From assembly GCA_002269645.1 (NCBI GenBank), contig NIVC01004526.1, forward strand, positions 1-43,268: a DNA stretch of 43,268 bases, given 5' to 3'. The notes under the pieces were generated by a model. It searched no databases, was not told where the DNA came from, and worked only from the letters and a program-made list of their open reading frames with translations. The translations under genes and the position numbers were made by a program. Source of the DNA: Macrostomum lignano (taxonomy: Eukaryota). This document shows positions 12,301 through 43,268 of this stretch, piece by piece; the stretch's first letter is position 1; every line of letters begins with the position of its first letter.

Positions 12301-13673
12301 CGCCTTCCCGAGGAAGTTCAACACCGCGGTGCAGTTCTCGAAAACTGCCGCGGGCTCCGGGCTTGGCCCCCAACGGTCGCAATGGTGCCAAGCTGTTCCT
12401 GCTGAAATCGGCTGGGAATCCAGAGATTCAGGATGACATGGACATCCGCTATGAGTTCAATGCGGAAATCTGCACTGGCAAAGGAACACTGCTGTCCACT
12501 ACTTTTGCATCACAGGAATCCGATGCTCGGCTGGCCAAGGGCTCAGAGGTGTGGAGTGGTAGGCAAGTTGTTTGCCACTTGGCTGATCCATTCAGAGGAC
12601 ACTGGTACAGCATCACATGTGACAGATTCTTCTCGAGTCCCTGCGCTGGCCAATCACTTGTACCGAGAAATGGGATTCACGTTTCTTGGAACAGTGATGC
12701 GCACTCGTGGTGGCCTGCCAGCCGATCTCAAGAATTCAACTCAAACCATGGCTCCACACACGAGCGAATTCCGGTTTTCTGAGGAGCTAAGGTGCCTGGG
12801 ATGCTGAGAAAAAAGGCCTCTATGACAGATGGACCCAGATTATTGAGCCAATATGGATTCACCATAAATTTTTATACAGTGTAGTGTTAGTTGTCCTTGC
12901 CACCAGTGTCTTTGACAAGAATCGTTGAATATCTCGATGTTGCTGACGGAAAATTTTGATCCATATGGTGGACTTTTACGAAAATCGGTAATTCGGTTTG
13001 CGAGCTATCGTGAAATGGGTCGTGTGTATTTGTAGTACACTCCCCGTGGTCTTTCCCCATGGGGAAAAATAGCGTGGTCTTTCTACTGTTAAGCGACTCA
13101 TGCCAGGAAGGGTCCGGGAGCTCGGTACACGATTACCGGCTATTTAGGCAATAGTTAGGATTAGGGCTAGGATTAGGGTAAGAATTAGGATTAGGATTAG
13201 GGTTAGGGTAATTTAGGATTAGGATAACGGTAAGGATTAGGATTAGGATTAAGATTAGGGTTAGGATTAGGGTTAGGGGGGCCGATTAGGGTAAGGGTTA
13301 GGGTTAGAAATGTTAGTAAAAGCCGATATTTAAAAAATGCATTGGTTTTTTATACTGATAATTAATGGTTGAGACGGGACTGGAGACATCAGTAGCGCTC
13401 ACCAGCAGTAGCTGTTGCAGCAGCGGCCTTTTTCCGCTGAGCTGCCGGCCTGCCGCCGCCGCCGCCGGGTCCGACAGCGGCAAACTGCGGATCATTGTTG
13501 GACAGCCAGTTGGAGGCCGCCGCGGCCGCAGCAGACCTCGGGCCGCCGCCGTCGGCCAAATCGTTCGCTGCTTTATCGTCGGAGTTGGCATCAGCGGCGG
13601 CGGGGAAGGCCCGACGGCGGGGCATCAGCGGCGCCGGCACCAAGTCGTCATCGTCAAGAGTCTGGCGGTCCAT
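9375..13673 (-). CDS. Caspase-3/7-like cysteine protease (C14), multi-exon
   Basis: Exons at about 13673-13390 (putative prodomain, uncertain), 11250-11045 (YNMRHPCRGYCLIVNNYEF), 10745-10527 (VLMSHGEPDQIYGTDG, catalytic His) and 9789-9375 (KPKLFFLQACRG, catalytic Cys; ADFLVAYS; GSWFVQSLC; KQVPCIVSMLTKEVYF). One frameshift near 9612. Confidence 0.92.
9855..10490. repeat. 39-bp minisatellite in caspase intron
   Basis: Unit cccaacaaagacccacaccttgagtccctgcccagcccca(tt), about 16 copies. Confidence 0.95.
10843..10985. repeat. Minisatellite with ggcactgaaggacaggc core in caspase intron
   Basis: About 4-5 copies of a ~30-bp unit sharing its core with the array at 13758-14120. Confidence 0.85.
11389..13088 (+). 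mobile_element. Decayed piggyBac-superfamily DNA transposon (1.7 kb) in caspase intron 1
   Basis: TIRs CAGTAGAAAGACCA (11389) and TGGTCTTTCTACTG (ends 13088); flanks CTAA and TTAA. Subterminal 20-bp inverted repeats at 11549-11568 and 12918-12937. Frameshifted transposase fragments YLCVDETPVVYWG, FNAEICTGK, YSITCDRFFSS, GFTFLGTVMRTRGGLP. Confidence 0.88.
13154..13310 (+). repeat. Degenerate interstitial telomere-like (TTAGGG/TTAGGA)n tract
   Basis: ttaggattagggctaggattagggt... including several perfect TTAGGG units. Confidence 0.8.
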
Positions 13674-25361: not shown

Positions 25362-28300
25362 CTGGGAGTGATGCGCCGTGCACTCCGGCTTCTGAGGCAG
25401 AAAATTAGAGAACACAAATAATTAAACTTATTTACTACTAATTTGCACAATGCCTTTTCTACATTAATGCGTCAAGACTGACTCTAACAGACTAGCTATC
25501 TATGTTGGCTGTATAAACTGAGGTCTACGCTTTAATGTTTCAATGAACTATGAGTAATGACCAGTGAAAGCTAGAGTCCATCTAGGCTACACTACAAGAA
25601 ATTTGGCTCTTGGTTGTTTTAGATAGGAATTCTTTCTTTAATTAGCATTTCATAATTTTATGAACATAATTTTTAATAATTTTATTTAAAAAAATAAAAT
25701 AAAATAGTTAATAATTTTTTGAAAAATAAACTTGAATGTCTACTTTTTAAGTTATTGTTATAGTTATACTGTCAAAACAGTCACATTATATAACTATTTT
25801 AATCAGTTGTCCATACATAATTTGCAATTAATATTTAACACTCATAAAAATTAGCTATAGATAAGCTCTGTTGGTTGCATATCTGCCCATTAAGGCAGTG
25901 GCATATGCAGTGGCAGTTGGGGCATAACACTGTTACCAAGTTGGGCCATCTTAGTGGAAGATGTTTAGGTAAAAAGCTTTAGTGAATATTTATCAATGTT
26001 TTTGTTATGAACATTGAGTACCTAATTTTCAGAGAGGAATAGATTATTAATTTCTAAACATAGATGAAGCTTTAATATGAGCTAATATTCTGGTGAGAAT
26101 CAGGTCAAATGAAAAATAACTTTATACAATGAGATGCTAGGAGAATAGCAATGTCACTTTTTGTCTTTTTGATTAACAAAAATTAAATTGTTATACACCT
26201 TGAATTGCATCATAGTGTTGAAAAAACATTGTGGAAGCAAAGAATAAGACTTGATTAAGACTATGTAACTATTCAAATATATTGTTAACATTGATGGAAA
26301 CTGATACTGACTAACTAAGCAATTGACTACATAATAACTGCCTTTTCTGACTTGTACTCAATTTGACTTGATATGACTGTTAAATTAAGTGCTATGATTC
26401 ATATTATTGATTGGATGAGAACTGGCCTAGATATTATAAAGACTAAACTGCTAATGCAACAATGTAGGTTTGAATTTTTATAGTGTAAATTATTGTCTTG
26501 AATCATTTTTAAAGGTAAAAAGTATGAACTATAAAATAGAAAGACAATAAAATATTAGAAGTCAAACAAAAAAACTTCATATAAACCTTAAATAAAGCAA
26601 TTAAAAGCACAATACATAAAAATAGTATTTTTGTCAAACATAAAAAAGCATCATTTTAATCTTTAAAGATTAAAGCAATCTCCTAAGCTGCTATAGATTC
26701 TATTCAGTTTTATCATTAAGGTCATAAAGTTAGGGTCTCTAATATACTTTTTTGAGTGCACACCTATACTCTTAAATGTAGGCTTTTGTTGCAATAATAA
26801 ATGACCTTTAATGGTTGATTTTTTTCTTTTTTTGCTTATAATACTTGTAGCATAGAATGAATATATACAAAAATTTCTTTAAATGCTTTATTACAAACTA
26901 AGAAACTGGAAAGCTTAAAATTTATGCTTAAAAACTTTTCATTGTTCTTTGTTCAAACTGTACTAACTTTTCTGTATGATTTTAGATAGTGCATGCTAGG
27001 TATACATGCATATTACTTTCTTAGGAATAATGCATGCCAATTATGCACATTTAACTTTTGATCTGCAAGGCAAATACACACCCAAATTTTCAGGTATATA
27101 CTTTATGATCTGGAGTGTGGTAGGCAATAGCTATAGTTGCTTTTAAATAAACATTCTGTTAGCATATTGTACATTATATATCATACACTTTTTCTACAAA
27201 TATTAGTGTTATACAAACAGTATAAACAAACAATATGTTTATACTTGAATTTTTTAAATAACTAAGCTTCATATACTATTTAGTTCATTTATTTAATCAA
27301 GATCAAATGTTAGTCTAAGATCATTCAAACTCACTCACAATCACTACCTATCCCTCTTTTACCATATACCAGTTCACTAGGCCTATAATCTATACCAAAA
27401 CTTTTTTGCTAGAGGAAGTGCTTATCCCTATGTCCCATGCTGATAATTACAATTTTATTCACATGGAAATGTGTTGATAATTTTCAGCTTATCCTCATGG
27501 CAGCTTATTGAAGTATTAAATTACAGTCTTGAAGTCTCGCAAAGCTAATTTAATTTACTTAAACTTTAAGTATTACACACATTCATTGCATTGCTTACAT
27601 CAACTAATGAAAAATATGGTAGTCACACCATTAGTCAAATGAACTACAAGGTAGACATCCTTCTTAGTGGTGGTCAAATGAAGTTGACAAAAGATATATT
27701 AAAAAACCATAGTCAATAAATTACTCACATGCTATGTTTGCTTTTATTTGTAGACTTTTATTCTAGTTTGTTTAATTTTGTTTCTTGAAGTTCTGTCATC
27801 AGAACTGGCACAAAAAGAAAGTACAAAAAAGAAAATGATCTTTACTTAAAAACCCTATAAAAAGGAGCTGGCAAATGCTTGCTTGGTAGTATAGACATAG
27901 CAAAATGGAAAATGTGCTTAAAATTACCTAGAACGGCTAGTATAAAATGTGTACAAACCACCAAACATAAGTGTAGTACAAAAATTTCAAAACTTTTAAT
28001 AGCTTTTCCTTTGGCAAAAATTTTGCTACAATTTTGCTACCAATTAATAGTCCATGTTAGCTGCCCTTTATAACATTGTTTGTGGCTTTTTATTACTTTA
28101 AAACAAATAATTTATGTGCATTATTGTTGTCATTCATATTTTAATTTAGTTTTCACTATTTATTGTACTTTTTAAAAAATAATTTTTGCTTATGTTACAG
28201 AAAGTATTAATTTTTAAACCTAAGCTGAAAAGTAATTGTTATAAATTATAAAAAATTATAAAAAAAGAAAATAGACAATAGATTATATAGGCCTAGCTCT

Positions 28301-29445
28301 GTGACTTAAGACTATAATGCTATTGCTGCTACTAATTTCTGAAACAGACTTAAGCTTTTTAAAAGTAAAACTTCTGTTTGGATTTCTTTTGGAAGTTTAA
28401 AAATAGCTTGTGCATTTGTTTAAAGAAGCCTATGCCTTATTGCTTAATGCTACGAGTATATGGGGGTTTTGAGTTAAGTCAATATTAGGTTAGGCCTAAC
28501 TTTACCTAAACAGAAGTAAACATGCATATACCTAAAGTCCTATTTTTTTCAATGGTAATAAAAATCTTGTAAGATCTTTTTTGTTATCATTGGACCTTAG
28601 AGTTGATTCCCTAAATAAATTCATTTTTTACATAGATACATGATTCATTTTGATTGATTTTAATGGTCTAGCTTAGCTTAGGCCTGCTATAGTTTTTAGG
28701 CTATTGCATTTTTATAGCAATCAGATACAAAGATAGATAGGCCTAATTAAGAAAGCTTAGATTAGAGTTAGCTCGTATTAGAGGTTAAAAACCCAAAAAG
28801 TTTGTTCTATTTTTATATTTTTATAAACTAATTTAATGACTTATGACTATTTTATATATGCTTGAGAAATATATTAAATTTATTATTGGGAAAATATTAA
28901 TAGATATAAACAATCCCTTGTTATGCCTATAGCTTTAGAAAACGAGTGTATAAAGTAAAATTATTAAAATTAAATAAGTCTAGTTTAATAGAAAAATAAA
29001 AACATTTTATTTTTTTCCTTCAAATATCAAACTATCTTTAGTTATATCTGCTAATAAGCTTAAGTTTATTTGTCTAAAATAAATTTAACCTTTTAATATT
29101 TGGTTTTATTGTCCTAAAAACATTTTAATTCCTTTATCTAGCCCTATAGTAACTATATATGATTAATATTTTTAAATTTCATACTTCAAAGTTTTTTAAC
29201 TTGAACACAATTTTTTCTTTCTACAGATATTTATCAAAGAACTAACATCTTGACCATATAACAACTTGCAGCTAATAATATATGTATGCAATTTAATTTG
29301 GAATGTAGTCATAGGCTTGTGTTTGAACTTTGTGATATACTTATATTTTTGGTAAGTTCATTATTTATTCATTTTAAACAAAATAAAATAGATCAATTAA
29401 ATATTTGCTATGCTATTAATTTTTTTATCAAAATTTACCTATACT

Positions 29446-30041
29446 CTAGGATGGAATTCTTGCACAAAAGTTGTTATACGTTTGTGCACACTTGTCAAAT
29501 TCATGCGCACTTGCACACTGAAAAGAAGCCTACTTATGCACTTTTAAAGAAGGTATGTGCGCGCTCCATTATTGTATGCACTTGCGTAAGAAGCTGTTTG
29601 CCAAAGAATCACAGACAGGATTTGACTTGTACATGCATTCAACATGGTTATGAGCCATGTGGTGTATGCGGGCTCAAGTTCTCCTACTTTTCATAGTCTG
29701 GAAGATTGTTTTTACGCCGGAAAATTTCAAAACAAAAGTAAAACAAAGAATAATAGTTTTTAGCAAAAACAGTTTCTTTGAAGTTTAGTAAAACTCTAAT
29801 AATTTTTAAGAATATTTTCTCTAAAAAATATAGTGTTCAAGCTACTTTACACTTAAAGTACAACTTTTTAATTTATGTCGGCGTAGAATTGCAAAACTAG
29901 AAATTTCATTTTTTGCTACATAGGGCCATGATCTGCATTATGACTTATTTTTACAGCTGGCATGTGGCTCCAAATTTTTTGTGCTGACTCCAAAAACGTG
30001 CGCGCACATTTTCTTACCCTCAAGCAAGAATTCCATCCTGG
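29446..30041. mobile_element. hAT-like MITE (596 bp)
   Basis: 18-bp TIRs C(T/C)AGGATGGAATTCTTGC with one mismatch, and a perfect 8-bp TSD CCTATACT (29438-29445 and 30042-30049). Confidence 0.85.
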
Positions 30042-31957
30042 CCTATACTATTTTAGATGCAATTTGCCAGTCAAGACTAAAGACAACTGAAAGCAAAGAA
30101 AAATCATAAAAATGTCTAAAGTTGATGAAGAATAAAGGTAGTATTAGTAAAAGAAAATAGTCCCTTTGGCTGATCTTCTGGCTAGGCCTAGGCTTCCTGA
30201 TGTAGCCATTATATCAAGTGACAGCAAGACCAGTGCTATTATTTTTCTAGCAAAATGTCAAGTTACTAGGGCCTATTTTGCTAGCAAAATGAGACCTCAT
30301 TTTTTCATAAGGAAATAAACAAATTCTTTTACTCATTTTTCCACACATCCAGTTCTGTAGTGTTTGGCACAAGGCTAGAAAGTGAACACTTCCTTTTTAA
30401 TAATTGATCTCCATCAATAGACAGTATCACTGCTAGTGCTAGATATGATGACAACAAGACCAAGAAAGTATATACGACTATGAAGTAAGTGAGAGCTCTA
30501 CATGTATAAGAGTAATAACATGTAGATGGAGCAAGGTAAGCATAAAGTTTCTATAAAATTTCTATCAGGCCCTATCAAAATGACCTTTTACCAAATTACT
30601 AGGCCTAGCATAGTTACCTTTATTGCCTGCCCCCTTTGGCAGAAACCTAAAAATGAAAAGGACTAAACAAATTTTAGCAAAATATGGAATCATCCTTTTA
30701 TGCTTTAGGCCTATCCCTTTTGGGATCTTTACCCTCTAGTCTAGTCTTACGATTACGAGTATGAAGTCAAGATTTAAACTTAAACTTGAAGCTGAAGCCA
30801 AATTCATGCCATGGTTTGCACCCTATTTTATTCATTTGTAATTCTCTAACCATGTAAACAATATAGGGGCCTAGTTAGTAGTGCAAAGACAAATCGACAT
30901 GATCGTAGCTTCTTCAATTCTTTGTCCGTCCGTCTGTCTCCATTATAATTATAATAATCACCGCGGGTGTATTTCTTTCATCAGCTGAATCATTTAATTT
31001 TTGTACTAAATTTAACAAAAATTGCAAGAAACATAATCAATGACGAAGCTATTAGTCACACAGCATGAACTTTTAAGCAAAAGTAAATATGGTAATATTT
31101 ACACAGGCTTGTTGAAGCGCACTGCTTTACAATTTCATCATAAGCATATGAAGGCCTTTTCCAAGGACTATATATAACGTGAGTAGGCCTTGGCATTTAA
31201 AACTGATGATTTCTGATGAGAATCAGGATCAAACTGGAAAAATAAAGGCATCGAAAAATTAGTATACTGCCGCTAATCTTTATGATCGAGCTTTGCGCTA
31301 AGAGTTATTTCCGTCCTTCATTCGTTTCATTCCGATTCAAAAGTAATTATAAATTGAGCAATACATCTGTACATGTAGTTATACAATTGAACAACATGTA
31401 CCATGGATAGATCCGAGCTATGTGTTTATGTGATATGTACATGCATTTGTAGCTAGGCTGACCACAAAAATGTAATGTACTTGCAGAATTTATATTCAAG
31501 GCACTAGATATAAACTCAAGCGGTCGATTTGGCTGTAGATAAAAAATAAAGCAGTACATGTACACTTGATGCATTTCGTTCAATATAGGCCCTCGAATTC
31601 TATATTTAAATATATCGCGTTCCTACAAAAGCCTTCACCAGCTCAACCACTCTCATCAATTTGAATCTCAATTAGATAGACCTGCTGCCGCTAATTAGAC
31701 TCTATCATCTGCCCTCTCCCCTTATATTCGTAGGGCTCGTTTTGCAGCTGCATCTCATATCACACTTTAACTACGTACCATACAAGCATGTGCAAAGTGC
31801 TGGTTGCGAGCCTCCAAGGGTCAGGAGTGGAGAAAGCTTACATAAGCTAAACTCGCAGGTTGAAGAGAACGTAAAAAAACCATGCCAAGTTAAAAATTGG
31901 CAGAAGCAAGGCAAGCGTGTCCGAGAGCGATTTAATTAATGCATTGTTTGCATTTTC

Positions 31958-34334: not shown

Positions 34335-34632
34335 TGGAACTGAGATCTTTGGAACTGAGATCCCTGGAACTGAGATCCTTGAAACCGAGATCCTTGGAAC
34401 TAAGATCCTTGGAACTGAGATCCTTGGAACTGAGATCCTTGGAACTGAGATCCCTGGAACTGAGATCCTTGAAACCGAGATCCTTGGAACTAAGATCCTT
34501 GGAACTGAGATCCTTGGAACTGAGATCCCTGGAACTGAGATCCTTGAAACCGAGATCCTTGGAACTGAGATCCTTGGAACTGAGATCCCTGGAACTGAGA
34601 TCCTTGGAACTGAGATCCTTGGAACTGAGATC
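34335..34632. repeat. 15-bp minisatellite truncated by the Polinton insertion
   Basis: Unit ggaactgagatcctt; the last unit stops after ggaactgagatc, immediately before AGTAGT. Confidence 0.95.
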
Positions 34633-34901
34633 AGTAGTATAGAAAAAGACGCTTCTAGACCCAGAGCACTTTTTTAATGACCGTTTTAAGGGTCTAGAGG
34701 GGGGACACGGGGGGTAAATAAAAAAACACATCTAAACACCATTAACACATCTAATCACCCATAATCACCCCTAACAATAAAAATCATTCCCAACACTTCC
34801 AAACACTCCCCAACACCCCCTCGCGTCCCCCCTCTTAAGACCTTACAAACGGCCATTAAAATAAGGTCTGATCTGTAAGCGTCTTTTTCTATACTACTAC
34901 T
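34633..34901. repeat. Terminal foldback: 22-bp perfect and ~85-bp imperfect inverted repeat around a nearly G-free loop
   Basis: AGTAGTATAGAAAAAGACGCTT (34633-34654) versus AAGCGTCTTTTTCTATACTACT (34877-34898); the pairing extends to the ...GAGGGGGGAC/GTCCCCCCTC motifs. Confidence 0.9.
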
Positions 34902-34955
34902 CTATAACCCCTTGCCCGCGCCGCAGGCGCGAAGGGTCTTTTTCTGTTACTAAAA

Positions 34956-35270
34956 ATGACCCGAGTTTACACCTTTTCTGTTAGTGATACTTTTGAGACT
35001 GTTGCTAAAAATGCAGAGATAATAAAACAACATATTTTGAATGGAATAATTGATGAAGTTTATTTAAAATATGACGACAAGCATGACCTAAAGCTTTATC
35101 CATTAGAGCTAGATGAGATGTATGATTTAGAACAAGAGGGTGAGTTAATATTTCAACTTGGAGATTATTTAAATTCGGATGATTGGGAGGTTAGATCAAC
35201 AGATTCCGAATCAACAAATAGTTCATATGAAACCAGTGATTCAGAGAATGAAAGTGAAATTTTTATGTGA
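34956..35270 (+). CDS. Small acidic hypothetical viral protein
   Basis: 104-aa ORF with TAAAAATG start and D/E/S-rich C-terminus. Confidence 0.65.
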   Translation: MTRVYTFSVSDTFETVAKNAEIIKQHILNGIIDEVYLKYDDKHDLKLYPLELDEMYDLEQEGELIFQLGDYLNSDDWEVRSTDSESTNSSYETSDSENESEIFM

Positions 35271-35286
35271 AAAAAATATTTAAAAA

Positions 35287-35541
35287 ATGAACTATTATTC
35301 TATAACAGAAACGACGTTTATTATGAAAAATATATATAAAAAAATGAAGGTAAATCGAACCCATGGTTCGCGTGCTTTGCACGATTATTCCTACATCGGA
35401 AATGTTCCAATTAATGAACTTAATGAAAATTTAAGTTTGATAACAGTTGAACAAATGTCAATAATAATATTAGTAACAATAATAGTAATAATATTGTTTT
35501 TGTTTGTAATAAAAAATTTACTACCATGTTGTCTTAAGTAA
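35287..35541 (+). CDS. Small single-pass membrane protein (viral)
   Basis: 84 aa; hydrophobic stretch IIILVTIIVIILFLFVI followed by PCCLK. Confidence 0.6.
   Translation: MNYYSITETTFIMKNIYKKMKVNRTHGSRALHDYSYIGNVPINELNENLSLITVEQMSIIILVTIIVIILFLFVIKNLLPCCLK
35354..35385. repeat. Double-hairpin element copy 1
   Basis: AT-CGAACC-CAT-GGTTCG-CGTGC-TTT-GCACG-AT. Confidence 0.9.
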
Positions 35542-35551
35542 CTGTTCGAAC

Positions 35552-37159
35552 TTAGTTCGCTGATATTAGTTGGTTCTCATAAAACGAACCCAATATTTCT
35601 TCACCGTCCTTATCAGCAATTATATAGGTTGTAGGATTGGTATTTAAAACTTTACTGATAGTAAATTTCTCACTTATCTTCCAATATCCTTTTCTTCCTT
35701 TTTCAAACTTATCTTTCCATTTATAGATATAAACAGAATCACCAACCTTAAAAGATTTCTTTTTATTTTTTTCAAATTTTCCAAAAGTAACTTTAACGTT
35801 TTCAGGATTGTTATAAGCTTGTTGAGGAGTCATCTTTATCGCCGAATGATATGAATTGTTATAATCTTTCACTACGTCTGGTAATATTTTTACCCATTTT
35901 TGGTTACCATTAAGACTAAACTGAAACCACAATTTCTTACCTAAAGTTCGATTAAATCTTTCTATTAATGCGTTTTTGCTTTCTCCATAAATAGAATAAA
36001 TTTTATTAATATACTCCCCATTCGCGTCTTTTTTCCTTTCTTGTCCTTTTTCAAAATGATATAATTTATACATATGAGGATTGTAAAATTCTTTTCCTTC
36101 GTCAACACACAAACGATCGCTTTTTTCTCCAAGACTTCTAAAAGCAGCAGCAACATCCTCTCCTTTTTTGGATTTCAAAGGAACAGCCCACGCGTATCGA
36201 GTAAAACCATCTAATATGGTTAAGATATATTTATATCCTCTTTCGTTCGGCATCGACATTAAATCAGCATACCAAATTTCATTCTTTTTGAAGTTCATGA
36301 TTTTTCTATAAAATTTCGGTTTTCGATATTCTTTATGAAGAATCTTTGCCTCATCAGAACTTAACCCACCACCACTTAACAACAAACACTCAACACAATT
36401 ATTTCCATGTTGATTATAATTAATTCCCAAACCAAATTTAACTTTAGACTGCAAGATCTTTTTAACCATCCACCTAGTTAATTTTTGACCTACCGATAAT
36501 CCCTGCAAGTTATCTAATCCTTGAATCATTTTTTGATCGGCTTCATGTTTTAATCTTAATGCTTCCTCGGGTGTGTTCTTATCAGCATCTCTGTATGCTA
36601 AGTCATGATAGTATGCTAACCAATCAATTCCATTTATGGGAATTGAATCGGCTTTTGGGGTGTCATCAGGATTTAATCTCAAATCTAAGCGAGTGCCGGG
36701 TAGTTTACCCTCAATCTTTCGAAAGAGGCTGGAGCACACCTTAAGCGGCGATAATTACCGCCCATCTCCGTCTGCTCTCTGAACCTTCTCCTTATATTTA
36801 AAATACTTAGGAGCTTGGCTGCGCATTGCCACCGTGTCTTCAAGCTTGTTACCATCGAACCATAGGTTCGCGTGCAAAGCACGATTGGGAAGAGGAGTTA
36901 CCTCTGTTCCTTCAAAAGATTTCTCAATTGAAGTGGTACTTGAAGCTGTATGATGGGTTTCACGCAATTTGGAGATGTCGCCACAAATAGTGACTAGCAA
37001 GGACATTGCCTTCCTCACTCAGGCCACGGGTTAACCTGTGAAGTTCATTGATGGTAGGTGTAGTTCCCCTGTATATTTACCAGTAGTAAAGATTGGTGGT
37101 AAGCTTGTTAATCCTTTTTGAACATCTAACAATCCTCCTTCAAACACTATTTGGTTCAT
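35552..37159 (-). CDS. Parvovirus-type phospholipase A2 fused to retroviral-like (rve) integrase; two exons (37159-37034, 36700-35552; 424 aa) split by a group I intron
   Basis: Joined sequence ELHLPSMNFTG|PGTRLDLRL...PINGIDWLAYYHDLAY (PLA2 GPG loop and HD dyad). Integrase DDE motifs IWYADL, LCVDEGKEF, IERFNRTL. Typical Polinton integrase C-terminus FKVGD..V.I...F.KG...W...F.I.KV....PTTY.I.D..GEEI.G.FY. Confidence 0.88.
36701..37033 (-). ncRNA. Group I intron, subgroup IC1-like, 333 nt, ORF-less, terminal nucleotide A
   Basis: Minus-strand core motifs: P AAATTGCGTGAAA (36970-36958), Q AATGCGCAGC (36827-36818), R GTTCAGAGAGCAGA (36784-36771), S AAGGTGTGCTCC (36742-36731). P1 has a U-G pair at the 5' splice site. 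P3 CATCTCC/GGAGATG, P7 G-A(bulge)-GAGCA/TGCTCC, P9.0 AG/CT. Excision restores the frame and the GPG motif. Confidence 0.9.
36854..36885. repeat. Double-hairpin element copy 2 (inside the group I intron, P5 extension)
   Basis: AT-CGAACC-ATA-GGTTCG-CGTGC-AAA-GCACG-AT. Confidence 0.9.
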
Positions 37160-37709
37160 TTTTAATAGCCTTAAAAATACATGAAAGCACCAATTGTTTT
37201 GCAAACTCTTCAATGGTTGGTTGTTTAACTTTTTTATAGTTATTATCTACGCTAGTTAAGTATCTTTTATTTGTCCAATGTTCAGACTTTTTCATCTGAT
37301 CTTCATCTTTGTAACTAAACGAAGAAGCGGGAATGAAATGATCAATATCTAAATTTCCAGTATAATCTTTTGAAACATAATATTTTCTTGTGAAATTTAA
37401 CCAATCAAAAAAGAATTCTTTTGTGCAATCAAGATATGAGATATAGTCCTTGTCATTAAAATTTTTCAACGCCCAATTTATTCTATTTCTAATTAAAACA
37501 ATATGTTTGTAATTATCATCATTGTGATACTTGTTTTTTCTATATTCATTAAATTTATCTTTATTGTTTTTCATCCAAATAGTAGATGAGGTATTATGAC
37601 AAGATCGACAATCATTTCTAAATTTTTTTGAATCATTTCTCCAAAAATAAAATTCTTTCGTCATTGGTTTTTCTTGTTTACACTTAATACAAATCTTTTT
37701 AGGTTCCAT
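37140..37709 (-). CDS. Free-standing HNH-like endonuclease with N-terminal Zn finger (giant-virus/EndoVII-related type)
   Basis: CIKC...CRSC zinc finger; LDIDHFIP...HWTNKRYL...DNNYK gives the DH/N/N pattern. Confidence 0.72.
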   Translation of the reverse strand: MEPKKICIKCKQEKPMTKEFYFWRNDSKKFRNDCRSCHNTSSTIWMKNNKDKFNEYRKNKYHNDDNYKHIVLIRNRINWALKNFNDKDYISYLDCTKEFFFDWLNFTRKYYVSKDYTGNLDIDHFIPASSFSYKDEDQMKKSEHWTNKRYLTSVDNNYKKVKQPTIEEFAKQLVLSCIFKAIKNEPNSV

Positions 37710-37736
37710 TTTATAAAAAATAAATTTAACAATTAA

Positions 37737-38408
37737 TTAAACTCCAGTATGTCCAGCAGCTTTCGCAGCAGCTAAAACAAGTTTTCGCGGTGTTTTAAAT
37801 CCTTCTCCAACAGCTGGTTTGTTATTTATAGAATTAACAATCCTTTTATACAAGCTGGTATTTTTAGCAGCTCTTACTCCCAACTCATCATAAAAAATTT
37901 TTGCACTTACTAATTCATCCCTAGTATATAATTCAGGGTTAAATTTTACCCTAGGGTTCATAACAATATTATATGCTCCGCCCAATTCTCTATATAGTTC
38001 ATTTCGATTTTTATCAACTCCACCAATTCGATAATTATTATTACCTAAATCTGTCACAGCAATACTAGTTGGTGCAGCTCTCGGATATTCATCAACTCCA
38101 CCCCTTTCTGCAGCCCTAATCTCTGCAACTCTCAATTGAGCTTGATCAACATCATAAGCTGGCGGCTCATCCAAAATTTCATCCTCTTTTGGCTCCGTAT
38201 TTTTAGCAATTTTTTCCAGAAGATCTTTATCTGTTTTTTCTAGTTCACTAATTTTCCCAGTAATAGGATTAACAAAAGGAGCAGCAAATCTTTCACCCGC
38301 TAATTGTATTCCTAACTTTCTTTTTTGTAAATTTCTAACAAAATCAGAATATCTTTGCTTCTCTTTATAAATCGCTAACTCTCCATCAACGTCCATAAAT
38401 TGACTCAT
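37737..38408 (-). CDS. Putative Polinton core (pVII-like) protein
   Basis: 223 aa; VGEG followed by KLVLAAAKAAGHTG resembles the C-terminal motif of Polinton core proteins; divergently transcribed from the MCP. Confidence 0.4.
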   Translation of the reverse strand: MSQFMDVDGELAIYKEKQRYSDFVRNLQKRKLGIQLAGERFAAPFVNPITGKISELEKTDKDLLEKIAKNTEPKEDEILDEPPAYDVDQAQLRVAEIRAAERGGVDEYPRAAPTSIAVTDLGNNNYRIGGVDKNRNELYRELGGAYNIVMNPRVKFNPELYTRDELVSAKIFYDELGVRAAKNTSLYKRIVNSINNKPAVGEGFKTPRKLVLAAAKAAGHTGV

Positions 38409-38442
38409 TTTTTAACATAAAAAACTTTTTTAACTTAAAAAA

Positions 38443-39914
38443 ATGGCTGAAACAAAAACTATGTGGAGTGATAAATTTCATTTCAAAAAGCACCGACAGT
38501 ATATTAATGAGGTCAGAGCAAGAGATTTAAATTATACCCTACCAACAAGTGATAATTCAAATAACTTTACTACTGGAACGGTAACTTTTGACATCGGCGC
38601 AACCAACACTATATTGGATATGAAAAATGCGTTTTTCCGCGTTAGATGGTTGTATACTAGAAATGATGGAACTGCTCTTGCAGCCGGAGATATCGCAGAT
38701 CGATCCGGAATAATAATAGAAAATGATTGGTTTTATAAATGTTTTTCCCAAGCTCAACTAACTGTTAATGGTGCTGAGGTTGAGACATCATCAAACCCCG
38801 CAGAGATTAATGGAGTTTTGAAACATTTAAATTATACTTATTTATCAAAACAAGTTGGTGATAATGTTGGGTGGATGCCGGATAAAGGTAACGGTCAAGC
38901 AGTAGTTTTCCCTAATGTACAAAACGCAGCTGGTGCAGATACTGCAGCTCTAATTGCTTACCTTAATACAAACATAGTTCCAGTTGTAACCACTATGACT
39001 AATACAAAAGATATTAATACTGGTTTTATAGATCGTCAGAATAAATTCCCAGTCGTGGTTTTAACCACAGCAACAGCATATGAGCAGGACTTTTCAATCT
39101 TCCCGCTATTTGGGTTCTTCTCACCAAATCGGGTATGGAAAGGATTAAAATTTGGGATACAGTTGCAAATATCTGGTGGATATCAGCCTAGGATACTTTA
39201 TGGAACCTCAATTTCAACCGATATAGCAGTTCGTATAGATTCAATTCAATTAGTCGTACCAACTATTGAGGTAACAGCCCCACTTTTAAAACACATCGAT
39301 AATCAGTTAACGCATGATCAGGAAATATTTTATTTGAATCGTCGACATTTTATGCGAACCATTAATAACAATCAGGATTCATTCCAGTGGCAAATACTGA
39401 CATCAAAACGTCGGGTGAGATATATTTTTGTTTGGTTTAAAATAACAAACAGAAGGAGTAAAAGAGCAAATGGGGATTTATATTGGCTTCAATCGGGTGA
39501 CATAGCAGCACAAGCAGCTACCGCAACAGACAACGCAGTTGCTGCAATTAACGAGTTTAATGTTCAGAATATCCGCCTGCAGGTTGATGATCAATATTAT
39601 CCGGTTAAAGACCCCCTAAATTTAAATATAGCAAATATAATGTTAATGATTTTATAAAATATTATCAAGATTATGCCAAAAATGAAGCATATGCCGTCCC
39701 TCAGTACACACCCACAGAGTTTCTAAACATTCATCCAGTGGTTGTTTATGATCTAACGGCACAGAAAGAAAACGTAGCCAATATTGGACTTAATTATATG
39801 TTAGAGATTAATAAAACCGGTAATCAGGCACTTGACGCCCACGTATTGTTTCTAGAGGAATATATGTCAATTGCTAAAGCTGATGGCACGATTGTTCGGG
39901 ACGCGCCGCTGTAA
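38443..39914 (+). CDS. Double jelly-roll major capsid protein (frameshift near 39636)
   Basis: TFDIGATN..LDMKNAFFRV; CFSQAQLTVNGAEVE; RVRYIFVWF; VQNIRLQVDDQYYP. A second frame continues DFIKYYQDY...EFLNIHPVVVYDLTAQKE to TAA at 39912-39914. Confidence 0.88.
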
Positions 39915-39965
39915 AATGAGTGCAGGTCTCCGACCGTCGCGCCTATTTAAATTATTTCTTTAAAA

Positions 39966-40767
39966 ATGGTAAAGGCAAAACACGATAAGATATTTCCAAA
40001 TGATCCTTTTCTTTGTTTAGTAATTGGTGGGTCGGGTAAAGGAAAAACACACTTTGTTTATGACCTGATAACAACCGATGGAATGCTAGACTATAATAAT
40101 TTAATAATTTATACTAACAAACCTAGAATAAAATATTATGAATTTCTTAAACATGGATTAAAAAACAAATTAAAAAAAGATGTCTTGTTTAGAATGTTAA
40201 GAGCATATGAGCAATATGAGGATGATGACGAACCGCGATTTAATCTAGCAGACATTGAGGATTTATGTAAAACAATGGCACAACAGCCAGAAAACATCAC
40301 CGATCGCCCCGAAGGGTCGCGGACTTCGTCCGATCGAGCTCCAACTGTTAGAGTATCAACCCGATTAGCCTATGATCAAATTCCAAAACATGATAAAACA
40401 CTAATTATTTTTTGATGATTGTATTAATGACGGGGATCAAGAATTACAAAAGGAAATTTTTGTTAGTGGTAGAGGAGATGGAATCGGAGCTTTTTATCTA
40501 ACACAGTCCTTTAGAGAATTAGAATCGATTATAAAAAAGAATGCAAGTTGTTGTGTAATGTTTGATTTAGATAATTATGATTTACAAAATATACACGCTA
40601 GATTTAATCCCGGGTTGGATGCAAAACCATTTAAAAGTATGTGTAAAAAAATTTGGGATGATAGCCAATACAAACATATTTATATCAATCCGAGGTTAGA
40701 AAGGAAACATAGAATTTTAACAAATTTGATAAAAGAAGATAATGAGGAAGAAGAGGATCGTGCATAG
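39966..40767 (+). CDS. A32/FtsK-like genome packaging ATPase (one extra T in the T run near 40410)
   Basis: Walker A LVIGGSGKGKT; Walker B LIIF|DDC across the frameshift; downstream GRGDGIGAFYLTQS and IKKNAS motifs. Confidence 0.9.
40303..40334. repeat. Double-hairpin element copy 3 (in frame within the ATPase)
   Basis: AT-CGCCCC-GAA-GGGTCG-CGGAC-TTC-GTCCG-AT. Confidence 0.85.
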
Positions 40768-40845
40768 CACGCGTACCTTCGTACGATCGCCCCATAGGGT
40801 CGCGAACTTCGTTCGATCGTGCATAGCATGCGGACTTCGTCCGAT
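40757..40845. repeat. Tandem trimer of double-hairpin elements (six hairpins)
   Basis: AT-CGTGC-ATA-GCACG-CGTAC-CTTC-GTACG-AT-CGCCCC-ATA-GGGTCG-CGAAC-TTC-GTTCG-AT-CGTGC-ATA-GCATG-CGGAC-TTC-GTCCG-AT. Confidence 0.9.
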
Positions 40846-40863
40846 TAATTTCCCACTATAAAA

Positions 40864-41637
40864 ATGACTACAAATTTAAATACTATAAAACAATTGGTAG
40901 ATCGAACTAATTCAAAATTTAGTACAACATTACAGTTTATAATGACAACCAGCGAGCAACGGATTCAATTGCGCGATCCATTACAACTTGATCAAAGCCT
41001 AAGTTATCAAATAGGTTTAATACTATTTTCGGTTTTCAACATGCCTCAATTAATTAATGCAACAAATAATCAATTTAGATATTCTAAAGATTCCGGAGCC
41101 AATTGGACAACATTTAGCGTTAACCCAGGAGCGTATAGCTATACTGATTTGAATGCTTATATAGAAGGAGAATTAACAACTAATGGTGATTGGGTAGCAG
41201 GAGCAATTGTTATAGGTGTTGATTTACCGTCTGGCAGATTCACACTATCACTAGGATCCGGATATCAGGTTGATTTCACAATTGCAAATTCACTCAGAAC
41301 CATACTTGGATTTAATTCCCGAATAGTTACCACATCAAGCACCGGTGATACAGTTGGAAATATAGAGGGTGGAGTAAATACAATTAATATAACAACCGAC
41401 ATTTCAAACGGTGGTTATATAACAGACGATAACGGAGTTTTGGTTCAACGTGGAATTATTTATTCAATCCCATTTCTTGCTGTTCCAATTGGAGAGAAAA
41501 TGATTGTATCACCTCAAACCCCAATATATTACCCATTAAATCAATATAATGTTCAATCAATTTATATTAGGATTGTAGATGAAAGCGATAGATTAATAAG
41601 TTTTGGTGGGCAGTCAATAACAGTATTTTACGTATAA
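40864..41637 (+). CDS. Minor capsid (penton, single jelly-roll) protein
   Basis: LRDPLQLD...YQIGL; F.VNPGAYSYTDLN; SLRTILGF; INITTDISNGGY; PIYYPL...VQSIYIRIVDESDRLISFGG. Confidence 0.85.
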   Translation: MTTNLNTIKQLVDRTNSKFSTTLQFIMTTSEQRIQLRDPLQLDQSLSYQIGLILFSVFNMPQLINATNNQFRYSKDSGANWTTFSVNPGAYSYTDLNAYIEGELTTNGDWVAGAIVIGVDLPSGRFTLSLGSGYQVDFTIANSLRTILGFNSRIVTTSSTGDTVGNIEGGVNTINITTDISNGGYITDDNGVLVQRGIIYSIPFLAVPIGEKMIVSPQTPIYYPLNQYNVQSIYIRIVDESDRLISFGGQSITVFYV

Positions 41638-41658
41638 AACAGGTTTAGTACTGTAAAA

Positions 41659-41868
41659 ATGGGTAATCGAACAACATGTTCGCGTGCAAAGCACGATAAT
41701 AATAATAATTTAATAAAAAAACAATCAGAAAAAGTTAAAAAAGCTGAAGATAATTACGAACTAGAACTAGCAAAATTAAGGCAGTTACAAGCTGATAAAA
41801 TAAGAAAGGAATTGTTAAAACCCACACCTACGAAACTAACTAAAACCAAGAGTTTTTCAGGAACATAA
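41659..41868 (+). CDS. Small basic, coiled-coil hypothetical viral protein
   Basis: 69 aa with TAAAAATG start; Lys-rich. Confidence 0.45.
   Translation: MGNRTTCSRAKHDNNNNLIKKQSEKVKKAEDNYELELAKLRQLQADKIRKELLKPTPTKLTKTKSFSGT
41666..41697. repeat. Double-hairpin element copy (in frame in ORF 41659)
   Basis: AT-CGAACA-ACA-TGTTCG-CGTGC-AAA-GCACG-AT. Confidence 0.9.
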
Positions 41869-41869
41869 A

Positions 41870-42268
41870 ATGACCATGACGTGGGATGATTTTAAACAAA
41901 GATATGGAACAGACACAACAAGCAATATCGAATTAACAAATTGGGCGAGGCAGTTAAAAATAAAACCATTTAGATGTGTTATGCGAGATGAGATAAAAGA
42001 CTTACCACAATATGGATCTTTCATTGTTAATATTGAAACAACAAAAGAAAATGGTGTTCATTGGTCAGCAGTTTATTCAAAACCAAAACTTGTTTATTTT
42101 TTTGATTCATACGCGCTTCCTCCGTTACAGGAAATAAAAGACAAATTTAATCATACTAAAAATCGTTTATGTGGAGATCATCACGAACAGTTTCAAACCT
42201 TTGATAAAAGTTATTGCGGACAAGCGCGTTATATTTTTTATATCGACTTTCGAATGAAGCTCGTGTAA
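41870..42268 (+). CDS. Adenain-like (C5) cysteine protease
   Basis: FIVNIE....GVHWSAV (His), YFFDSYALPP (Asp), QFQTFDKSYCGQ (Gln, Cys); the C-terminus may be frameshifted. Confidence 0.88.
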   Translation: MTMTWDDFKQRYGTDTTSNIELTNWARQLKIKPFRCVMRDEIKDLPQYGSFIVNIETTKENGVHWSAVYSKPKLVYFFDSYALPPLQEIKDKFNHTKNRLCGDHHEQFQTFDKSYCGQARYIFYIDFRMKLV

Positions 42269-42288
42269 ACCACAAAGTATTTAAGACT

Positions 42289-42320
42289 ATCATGCAAAGC
42301 ATGCGAACCTAAGGTTCGAT
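42289..42320. repeat. Double-hairpin element copy, reversed order, intergenic
   Basis: AT-CATGC-AAA-GCATG-CGAACC-TAA-GGTTCG-AT. Confidence 0.9.
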
Positions 42321-42349
42321 TTTAGACTCTATAAAATAGACAGTAAAAA

Positions 42350-43268
42350 ATGTTATTTTCTGGAACACCCTCATGGAACGGAACAACAAGTACTGGTGGT
42401 GGTACTCTGGTGGAATAAGTGTTACATTCGGAGATAATCGATATATTAATGAAGATGAAGGTTATAAAAAAAGTGAAGTTGATACTAAACTAAATTTGAA
42501 ACGAAATGTTGCAGATTCCTATACCAAAACTGAAATCGATACTTCATTAAATCTTAAAAGAGATATTAGCGATTCATATACAAAACAGAGGTTGACACTG
42601 GTTAAATTTAAAAAGAGATATAACTGATTCTTATTCTCGAACTGATTCTGATTCGCGTTATGTTCAAGCCACCGCAACCGGAACTTTAGATATGGATAAC
42701 AATCGAATTATAAATGTTGCAATTACAACGAATAACTCGGTAGTTGATAAGAACTATGTCGATAATCAGGTTGGTAGTCGTAACGGCAATATCAATATGA
42801 ATAATTTTAAATTAACAAATTTATTATTTGGAACAGAGGCCACAGACTCGGTCAATTTAGGGCAGGTCAACGCTCGAGCTAATGTAACCGACGCCGATAT
42901 TTTTGCCACGCCGCTTACATCAAATACTTCAAATCCAGATGTTGTTCTTACAGCATCCGAAAATACCAACGATGCTTTTCGAGTTGGAGATGGAAGCCTT
43001 GCGACACAATGGTCACCAAATACCGGAACCACAACCAATATGGAAATTCAATTTGAATTTTTAGGTTATAATCGAAGAATAAATGAATTAAGAATTACAG
43101 GCAGCGCAACTATTGATATTCCATCGGGATGGTCGGTTCGTGCAAAAATGTTGCTACCGATGCATGGACGGTATTACGAACGTCGGGATCACCAATTCAA
43201 GCAACTTCATTTGCGTTAACTAATTTAACGGTTAATTTTTGGAAATATTATAGCGTTTTATTCCCAAC
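42350..43268 (+). CDS. Fibre/spike-like protein, frameshifted and truncated by the window end
   Basis: TAAAAAATG start at 42350; YTKTEIDTSLNLKRD-type repeats; MDNNRIINV...DKNYVD and INMNNFKLTNL...DSVNLGQ fibre-repeat motifs; possible discoidin-like C-terminal part. Confidence 0.6.

What the first reader, a model, noticed from the sequence alone, without database searches (positions are those of the whole stretch)
36701..37033. Group I self-splicing intron inside a protein-coding gene of an endogenous Polinton/adintovirus in an animal-like genome
Seen in sequence (minus strand): the short ORF ending ...ELHLPSMNFTG-TAA and the start-less long ORF ...PGTRLDLRL are the two halves of one parvovirus-type PLA2 motif (NFTG|PG, the Ca2+-binding GPG loop), separated by 333 nt. 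The insert folds as a complete IC1-like core. P1: exon CAGGU pairs with intron GCCUG, with the U-G wobble at the splice site. P3: CAUCUCC/GGAGAUG. P4: UGCGUG/UGCGCA. P5: CCAUC/GGUGG. P5a: CUUCAAG/CUUGAAG and UACCA/UGGUA with an A-rich bulge. P6a: CUCCU/AGGAG. P7: G-A(bulge)-GAGCA/UGCUCC, a fully compensated version of the canonical GACUA/UAGUC that keeps the G-binding G-C pair. P8: GGCGGU/AUCGCC. P9 hairpin, P9.0 AG/CU, and P10 (4 of 5 pairs with exon CCCGG). An in-frame TAA is the first intron codon, so splicing is obligatory for making the integrase fusion. Established knowledge: nuclear group I introns are essentially confined to rDNA, IC1 is the typical nuclear-rDNA subgroup of fungi, algae and protists, and known animal group I introns are mitochondrial. 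Some chloroviruses carry group I introns in mRNAs. Inference: an rDNA-type ribozyme was captured by a polintovirus and now gates expression of its PLA2-integrase.
Basis: partly seen in the sequence, partly recalled or inferred. Interest (0 to 1): 0.97.

Follow-up and report, generated by a model that had tools for sequence, protein, structure and literature searches.

The report
Group I intron in viral integrase gene
A real self-splicing-type (group I) intron, with a homing-endonuclease gene beside it, interrupts the phospholipase-integrase gene of a virus-like element integrated in a eukaryotic genome; similar introns were catalogued in such elements in 2025, and this copy looks partly decayed.

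Summary
Rfam's group I intron model matches window 36710-37043 (minus strand) over its full length, at 60.9 bits (threshold 50) and E 6.5e-15. The two ORFs are halves of one PLA2-integrase gene: 69 of 71 homologs that span the site read straight across it with no extra residue.

- The base at that 3' junction is not the G that group I introns end with. Rfam's alternative G, 9 nt upstream, lies inside the P9 stem and would add three residues that no homolog has.
- An HNH endonuclease gene ends 106 nt upstream of the intron. One homolog of it runs directly into a related intron core.
- Relatives in the same 90%-identity cluster exist both with and without the intron, as expected for a mobile intron.

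The 'animal genome / adintovirus' and 'captured rDNA ribozyme' readings are not supported. The host is unknown. Group I introns in Polinton-like viruses of protists were already reported in 2025. The capsid gene of this copy is broken once. Verdict: a genuine intron, and a new member of a known kind. I did not fetch relatives' DNA.

The parts
36701..37033 (-). Group I intron, with bounds as implied by the homologs' protein junction, P9.0 and P10 (333 nt). It starts with an in-frame TAA, and its last base is not G.
36710..37043 (-). Extent of the Rfam RF00028 match (model 1-253). Its 3' end at 36710 is a model-driven alternative 3' splice site that lies inside the extended P9 stem.
37034..37159 (-). 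Exon 1 of the PLA2-integrase gene (42 codons from the ATG). It carries the first part of the PLA2-like domain.
35552..36700 (-). Exon 2 of the PLA2-integrase gene (382 codons plus stop). It holds the rest of the PLA2-like domain, with its HD motif, and the rve integrase core. No stop or frameshift within it.
37140..37709 (-). Free-standing HNH (beta-beta-alpha-metal) endonuclease gene of 189 codons. It is co-oriented with the integrase gene and ends 106 nt upstream of the 5' splice site. Candidate homing endonuclease.
36854..36885 (.). 32-nt double-hairpin repeat (family D3) lying in the intron's P5 extension. It is absent from the related intron read through by P0150.
36709..36728 (-). P9: an 8-pair stem (two U.U mismatches) capped by a GAAA tetraloop. 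It contains the G that Rfam takes as the intron's end.
38443..39914 (+). Major capsid protein gene. It is broken once: relatives align in two pieces in two frames.
34633..43268 (.). Low-GC virus-like element (about 26-37% GC against about 50% in the host flank). Its left end abuts a host 15-mer array. It runs off the window's right end.

Best explanation
A genuine group I intron of IC-like architecture sits in phase 0 between the Gly and Pro codons of the calcium-loop region of a PLA2-integrase gene. The gene belongs to an endogenous Polinton-like virus element.

Proposed mechanism:
- The pre-mRNA folds into P1-P9. An external guanosine cleaves after the U of the U.G pair at 37034.
- The freed exon 1 is then joined to exon 2 at 36700, guided by P9.0 and P10. 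This restores the continuous PLA2 domain.
- Without removal, translation stops at the intron's first codon.

The intron forms a mobile cassette with the HNH endonuclease gene directly upstream. The endonuclease would cut intron-less alleles of co-resident relatives, and repair would copy the cassette in. That explains why close relatives differ only by the intron.

This particular copy is probably a decaying relic whose second splicing step is impaired. Its 3' terminal base is not the canonical G although the G-binding pair in P7 is canonical, and the element's capsid gene is broken.

Shown: the identity of the intron, its site, the polymorphism, and the HNH adjacency. Inferred: splicing chemistry, homing, and impairment.
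For: - RF00028 full-length match at 60.9 bits, E 6.5e-15. All core helices are canonical.
- The closest relative, P0001/P0121 (70% identity), is intron-less and reads across the site. 69 of 71 spanning homologs have zero residues at the junction.
- P0002 and P0028 begin with the in-frame translation of this intron's 3' end (tblastn E about 1e-7). Their cluster-mate P0123 (same 90% cluster) is intron-less.
- P0023 and P0056 start with a start-type codon directly before the Pro codon. An uninterrupted gene cannot have that, so there is a third interrupted lineage at the same site.
- The HNH ORF has an invariant D-H..N..N motif and two CxxC pairs in 21 homologs. It hits PHROG endonuclease VII / HNH families.
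- Homolog P0150 ends with about 50 residues that translate a related intron core (E 5e-13). The endonuclease family and the intron family are therefore physically linked in a second locus.
- The capsid gene is in two frames.
Against: - There are no transcript data, so splicing is not shown.
- Rfam places the 3' end at a G 9 nt upstream.
- The terminal base of the intron-bearing relatives is unknown, because I did not fetch their DNA.
- HNH cleavage specificity is unknown. The HNH fold match to solved structures is weak (best E 0.028), and Pfam gives no hit.
- The polymorphism is inferred from gene-caller protein starts, not from DNA.
Confidence: 0.62

Rival explanations
1. The intron is active and uses the G at 36710 as its terminal nucleotide, as the Rfam alignment suggests. 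The product is in frame, with three extra residues in the PLA2 loop.
For: The covariance model ends on that G. The resulting 324-nt intron is a multiple of three, so the frame is kept.
Against: None of 71 spanning homologs has a 3-residue insert. That G pairs inside an 8-pair P9 stem. P10 would have 2 of 6 pairs against 4 of 6 for the other site, and there is no P9.0. The generic Rfam model has a fixed 5-pair P9 followed by two bases, so it cannot represent a longer stem and tail.
Confidence: 0.12
2. The intron is fully active in this copy and ligates exons after a non-G terminal nucleotide. That would be a natural exception to the terminal-G rule.
For: P9.0, P10 and the protein junction all point to 36701|36700. 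Both exons are free of stops and frameshifts.
Against: From established knowledge of group I chemistry, the terminal G is needed for the second step. The P7 pair that binds it is the canonical G-C here. The element shows other decay.
Confidence: 0.1
3. One reading: an rDNA-type IC1 ribozyme was captured by an animal adintovirus/Polinton and now gates integrase expression in an animal genome.
For: IC-like features are present: P2, P2.1 and a P5 extension. More distant PLA2-integrase relatives lie on megabase contigs, and one distant hit lacking the PLA2 domain is named from a wasp, Cotesia typhae. A Cotesia bracovirus protein and adintovirus capsids are among the weak fold hits.
Against: No host marker was found. 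The associated endonuclease is HNH, not the His-Cys box type of nuclear rDNA introns (PMC9548176). Published group I introns in such elements are from protists (PMC12220804). The capsid family is nearly absent from databases rich in animal genomes.
Confidence: 0.1
4. Chance resemblance or an assembly artefact: two separate genes with an unrelated spacer.
For: The intron is a 45-48% GC island in 26-31% GC surroundings.
Against: E 6.5e-15 against the covariance model. Homologs are single genes. The same intron end is seen in two other contigs. The intron carries a repeat shared with three other sites of the element.
Confidence: 0.01

Closest known systems
Group I introns (RF00028) catalogued in endogenous Polinton-like viruses of Paulinella micropora, Desmodesmus armatus and Rhodomonas lacustris (PMC12220804, 2025)
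   Same: The same RNA family, found by the same model, inside integrated small dsDNA virus elements. The same paper reports free-standing HNH and GIY-YIG homing endonuclease genes in such elements. It also reports discoidin and YadA-type fibre domains in rhizarian elements, like the weak hits of the window's last ORF.
   Different: That paper describes the Rhodomonas introns as lying in a gene for a protein of about 50 residues upstream of the capsid gene, and it gives no host gene for the Paulinella ones. Here the intron splits the PLA2 domain of the integrase gene. An HNH gene abuts the interrupted gene, and presence/absence among close relatives is visible. Whether this window comes from one of those organisms is unknown.
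Intron plus free-standing homing endonuclease ('collaborative homing') of bacteriophages. Bonocora and Shub 2009 is listed as reference R12 of PMC11296320; the mechanism is stated from my own knowledge of that work.
   Same: An endonuclease gene lies outside but next to an intron-containing gene, the intron is present or absent among close relatives, and a related locus has the endonuclease ORF inside the intron (P0150).
   Different: The host here is a eukaryotic virus-like element. Cleavage at the intron insertion site is not shown. Similarity to phage introns is limited to a 48-nt core stretch.
Group I introns in protein genes of giant viruses. One example is the RNA polymerase gene of an endogenous giant virus of Cymbomonas, which has two intron-associated endonuclease ORFs (PMC10675990). 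Chlorovirus mRNA introns are known to me from general knowledge.
   Same: A self-splicing-type intron in an mRNA of a eukaryotic dsDNA virus, accompanied by endonuclease genes.
   Different: A much smaller virus class, a different host gene, and here an integrated, partly decayed copy.
Nuclear rDNA group I introns of the IC1 type (PMC3679873)
   Same: Overall architecture: P2, P2.1, a P5 extension, and P9 with a GNRA loop.
   Different: Those interrupt rRNA genes and carry His-Cys box endonucleases (PMC9548176). This one interrupts a protein gene of a virus-like element and is linked to an HNH enzyme. Subgroup membership was not testable here.

Membership tests
Group I intron (Rfam RF00028) | Covariance-model score at or above the curated gathering score, over the whole model | tested here: met
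   60.9 bits against a threshold of 50, model positions 1-253, E 6.5e-15; repeated
Group I intron (Rfam RF00028) | P1 formed by the 5' exon and an internal guide, with a U.G pair at the 5' splice site | tested here: met
   37038-37034 pairs with 37024-37020, 5 of 5 pairs, with U37034 opposite G
Group I intron (Rfam RF00028) | Core P3-P8 with a P7 that has a bulged A and a G-C guanosine-binding pair | tested here: met
   P3 7/7, P4 6/6, P5 5/5, P6a 5/5, P7 1+5, P8 6/6. P7 differs from the consensus by compensated pairs.
Group I intron (Rfam RF00028) | A terminal G immediately before the 3' splice site | tested here: inconclusive
   At the junction supported by 69 of 71 homologs, P9.0 and P10, the last base is not G. 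The nearest in-frame G (36710) lies inside the P9 stem and implies an insert that no homolog has.
Group I intron (Rfam RF00028) | Self-splicing activity | not testable with these tools
   No transcript or biochemical data
Subgroup IC1 | Subgroup-specific peripheral elements and core signatures, scored by subgroup models | not testable with these tools
   Only the general RF00028 model is available. P2, P2.1 and a large P5 extension are present, and no P7.1/7.2 is seen.
Mobile intron / homing endonuclease cassette | An endonuclease gene within or next to the intron | tested here: met
   The HNH ORF 37140-37709 ends 106 nt from the 5' splice site. Homolog P0150 runs into a related intron core.
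Mobile intron / homing endonuclease cassette | Presence/absence of the intron at one identical site among close relatives | tested here: met
   P0002 and P0028 (with intron) against P0123 and P0004 (without); P0002 and P0123 are in the same 90% cluster. P0023 and P0056 against P0014. This is at the protein level only.
Mobile intron / homing endonuclease cassette | The endonuclease cleaves the intron-less allele at or near the insertion site | not tested
   Not computable, and a bench test of mobility lies outside what this report may propose
Polinton / Maverick or adintovirus | rve-type integrase | tested here: met
   Pfam rve at 32.8 bits against a cutoff of 32.6. Relative P0121 matches foamy-virus integrase chains at E 2.6e-9.
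Polinton / Maverick or adintovirus | Protein-primed family B DNA polymerase and terminal inverted repeats | tested here: inconclusive
   Neither lies in 34633-43268, but the element runs off the window's end
Polinton / Maverick or adintovirus | Double jelly-roll capsid, packaging ATPase and protease module | tested here: inconclusive
   A low-confidence model of capsid relative P0134 (pLDDT 50.7) hits double jelly-roll capsids, E down to 6e-12 but TM 0.2-0.3. The ATPase has only a weak A32 hit. The protease was not detected by profile.
Polinton / Maverick or adintovirus | Animal host (for adintovirus) | tested here: inconclusive
   The host flank has galectin, LRR and piggyBac-like fragments and many minisatellites, but no assignable organism
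Parvovirus-type PLA2-like domain (Pfam PF08398) | Profile match above the curated cutoff, spanning the junction | tested here: met
   Intron-less relatives P0121 32.9 bits (residues 22-93), P0123 34.7 bits and P0005 44.4 bits, against a cutoff of 23.9. Exon 2 alone scores 16.5 bits. The joined exons were not searched.

The most novel reading that the evidence does not exclude
The host is an animal. That would make this the first group I intron (with its homing endonuclease) known in a metazoan nuclear genome outside rDNA or organelles, delivered by an endogenous Polinton-like virus. Alternatively, the intron ligates exons after a non-G terminal nucleotide, a natural exception to a rule held to be universal.
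Probability: 0.12. Interest if true: 0.85.

Novelty: new member of a known kind. Interest (0 to 1): 0.5.

Why it matters
Reviews state that all known nuclear group I introns lie in rRNA genes (PMC3679873). Integrated virus elements are a route by which such ribozymes enter nuclear DNA inside protein genes.

This locus adds detail to a bare catalogue entry from 2025. It gives an exact insertion site inside a catalytic loop, a linked HNH endonuclease seen in two arrangements (beside the intron here, inside a related intron elsewhere), and presence/absence among near-identical genes.

That is the signature of the intron/endonuclease partnership described for phages, now seen in small eukaryotic DNA viruses. 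It also warns that gene callers split or truncate such genes: several database 'proteins' begin with translated intron sequence. Fast-filtered Rfam scans can miss these introns as well.

Tried and rejected
- The whole-window Rfam scan at gathering threshold found nothing. This was filter loss, because a narrower scan found the intron above threshold.
- I first accepted Rfam's 3' end (36710). I rejected it as the likely splice site after seeing the homologs and the extended P9.
- Host identification failed. Three exact-protein look-ups of host ORFs far from the element returned nothing. Pfam on 20 host ORFs gave only galectin, LRR, piggyBac-like and weak endonuclease fragments. The LRR ORF's best database hit was 42% identical, in an unnamed metagenome. 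There were no tRNA or Rfam hits in 1-34700.
- The cluster look-up gave no names or accessions.
- The supplement of PMC12220804 held no searchable intron table.
- Pfam, NCBIfam and PDB sequence searches of the HNH ORF were blank or marginal. PHROGs, the conserved motif and the fold hits identified it.
- The capsid model was of low confidence, so its fold hits are used only as 'double jelly-roll-like'.
- No second group I intron was found in the element.
- Phage genomes hold no close relative of the intron.

Full report
OBSERVATION

On the minus strand, an ORF from the ATG at 37159 ends ..NFTG and is followed by TAA at 37033-37031. A long frame without a start reads PGTRLDL.. from 36700 to the stop at 35552. 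The interval between them is 333 nt.

Rfam's group I intron model RF00028 matches 36710..37043 over its whole length, at 60.9 bits against a gathering score of 50 and E 6.5e-15. It matches again in an 8.7-kb scan. A whole-window scan with the default fast filters had missed it.

- P1 37038-34/37024-20, with U.G at the cleavage site
- P2 and P2.1
- P3 36977-71/36769-63
- P4 36966-61/36825-20
- P5 36956-52/36833-29, plus two P5a helices
- P6a
- P7 36779 and 36777-73 / 36736-31, with a bulged A
- P8 36762-57/36752-47

The unconstrained minimum-energy fold recovers most of these (z = -3.2). The two P7 strands differ from the Rfam consensus by compensated pairs.

ONE GENE, AND WHERE THE JUNCTION IS

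I searched the exons separately.

Exon 2 has more than 1000 homologs, mostly fusions of 380-490 residues with Pfam PF08398 (PLA2-like) and rve domains. The closest, P0001/P0121 (70% identity), is uninterrupted and matches exon 1 and exon 2 back to back. Of 71 homologs that span the site, 69 have zero residues between the end of the exon-1 match and the start of the exon-2 match, and none has three. In P0121 the PLA2 profile covers residues 22-93 and the junction falls at 32|33, so the intron lies inside that domain. The predicted product, 42 + 382 residues, is the size of P0123 (423).

THE 3' END

The protein evidence fixes the junction at 37034|36700.
- P9.0 fits it: 36730-29 pairs with 36703-02, 2 of 2 pairs.
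- P10 fits it: 4 of 6 pairs with exon 2.
- However, the base at 36701 is not the G with which group I introns are expected to end, while P7 keeps the canonical G-C binding pair.

Rfam ends its alignment on the G at 36710. This alternative is weak for four reasons:
- The generic model allows only a 5-pair P9 followed by two bases.
- Here P9 extends to 8 pairs (36728-36709) under a GAAA loop and contains that G.
- P10 for that site has 2 of 6 pairs.
- It would insert three residues that no homolog has.

Either this copy is defective in the second step, or the site is unusual. I give the base only because it is the boundary under test, and I propose no change to it.

MOBILITY

Two database proteins, P0002 and P0028, begin with the in-frame translation of this intron's P7'-P9-tail segment and then continue with exon 2. 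P0123 belongs to the same 90%-identity cluster as P0002 and is uninterrupted, as is P0004.

In a third lineage, P0023 and P0056 begin with a start-type codon directly before the Pro codon. This is impossible in an uninterrupted gene, where a Gly codon stands there. Their relative P0014 is uninterrupted. The same site is therefore interrupted in at least three lineages and free in their near relatives.

Directly upstream, co-oriented and ending 106 nt before the 5' splice site, lies a 189-codon ORF (37140-37709). Evidence that it is an HNH endonuclease:
- It has 2547 relatives in the representative library.
- An alignment of 21 of them keeps D-H, N and N invariant, plus two CxxC pairs.
- PHROGs calls the family endonuclease VII / HNH.
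- The model is confident (pLDDT 91.8). Its best fold hits, though weak, are HNH domains.

One relative, P0150, ends with about 50 residues that are the translation of a related intron core, aligning to 37000-36827 (E 5e-13). In that locus the endonuclease ORF runs into the ribozyme, whereas here it stands beside the interrupted gene. This is the pattern expected for an intron/homing-endonuclease partnership.

CONTEXT

The element is a low-GC block from about 34633 to the window's end. It carries the integrase, the HNH gene, an unknown ORF, a capsid gene, a weak A32-like ATPase piece, further structural ORFs and a fibre-like ORF.

Breaks:
- The capsid gene (38443-39914) is broken once. Three relatives align in two pieces in two frames.
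- The ATPase appears as two ORF pieces, but I had no relative with which to count breaks.
- The integrase exons have no stop or frameshift.

The host flank is about 50% GC, dense in minisatellites, and has galectin, LRR and piggyBac-like fragments. Nothing identified the organism.

The capsid family has three database relatives. A low-confidence model of one of them resembles double jelly-roll capsids of many virus groups, both animal-associated and protist-associated. Animal versus protist stays open.

LITERATURE

- Nuclear group I introns are said to be confined to rDNA (PMC3679873) and to carry His-Cys box endonucleases (PMC9548176).
- A 2025 survey reports RF00028 hits in Polinton-like viruses of Paulinella (53), Desmodesmus (2) and Rhodomonas (44). 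It also reports free-standing HNH/GIY-YIG genes and discoidin/YadA fibres in rhizarian elements (PMC12220804). The window's last ORF has weak hits of that kind.
- Endogenous giant viruses also carry such introns (PMC10675990).

The kind is therefore known. The host gene, the site and the linked endonuclease are new details.

STEPS LEFT OUT AND SLIPS

- I cannot tell whether those contigs are viruses of animals. This is listed under referred steps.
- For the same reason I did not look up the window's own viral proteins.
- I did not search the joined exons.
- In my private reasoning I briefly recalled, from memory, a short loop motif of a parvoviral protein and fragments of a textbook ribozyme. 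I stopped and used neither. Every comparison here rests on tool-returned sequences.
- My notebook names the intron's terminal base and speculates on its history. I have left the notes as they are.

Noticed in passing
window 35354-35385, 36854-36885, 40786-40817, 41666-41697: A 32-nt double-hairpin repeat occurs four times, only inside the element. Three copies lie between or just after genes, and one lies inside the intron. 11 pairs are predicted, 4 of them kept through changes on both sides. It could be a terminator-like signal or a small mobile palindrome. The related intron read through by P0150 lacks it.
   Followed up: partly
window 38443-39914: The capsid gene aligns to its three known relatives in two pieces in two frames, which is one break. 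The family itself is very rare: 3 hits among 5.8 billion proteins.
   Followed up: partly
window 34628-34659 and 34872-34903: A 32-nt inverted repeat (88% complementary, 212 nt apart) lies right at the element's left end, next to the host 15-mer array. It may be a terminal structure of the element.
   Followed up: no
window 39966-40415 and 40558-40767; tandem 30-mer at 40756-40845: The packaging-ATPase-like frame (Walker A, weak A32 hit) stops after 149 codons, and a 69-codon ORF follows. The gene may be in pieces, but there was no relative to check against. A 30-nt tandem repeat follows it.
   Followed up: no
window 26000-31000: A second low-GC block (26-30% GC) lies inside the host flank. 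It has no long ORFs and its nature is unknown.
   Followed up: no
window 1-34600: The host flank is unusually dense in minisatellites (periods 15-42 nt, up to 1.5 kb, one array with GC skew above 0.9). It also holds a 565-nt ACT run and TTAGGA/TTAGGG-like repeats at 13155-13277.
   Followed up: no
window 36701-37043: Methodological point: the default-filter Rfam scan of the whole window missed an intron that scores above the gathering threshold when a shorter stretch is scanned.
   Followed up: yes
proteins P0002, P0028, P0150 (database entries): Public gene calls for relatives include translated intron sequence at their N- or C-termini, so such 'proteins' are partly ribozyme read as protein.
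   Followed up: yes
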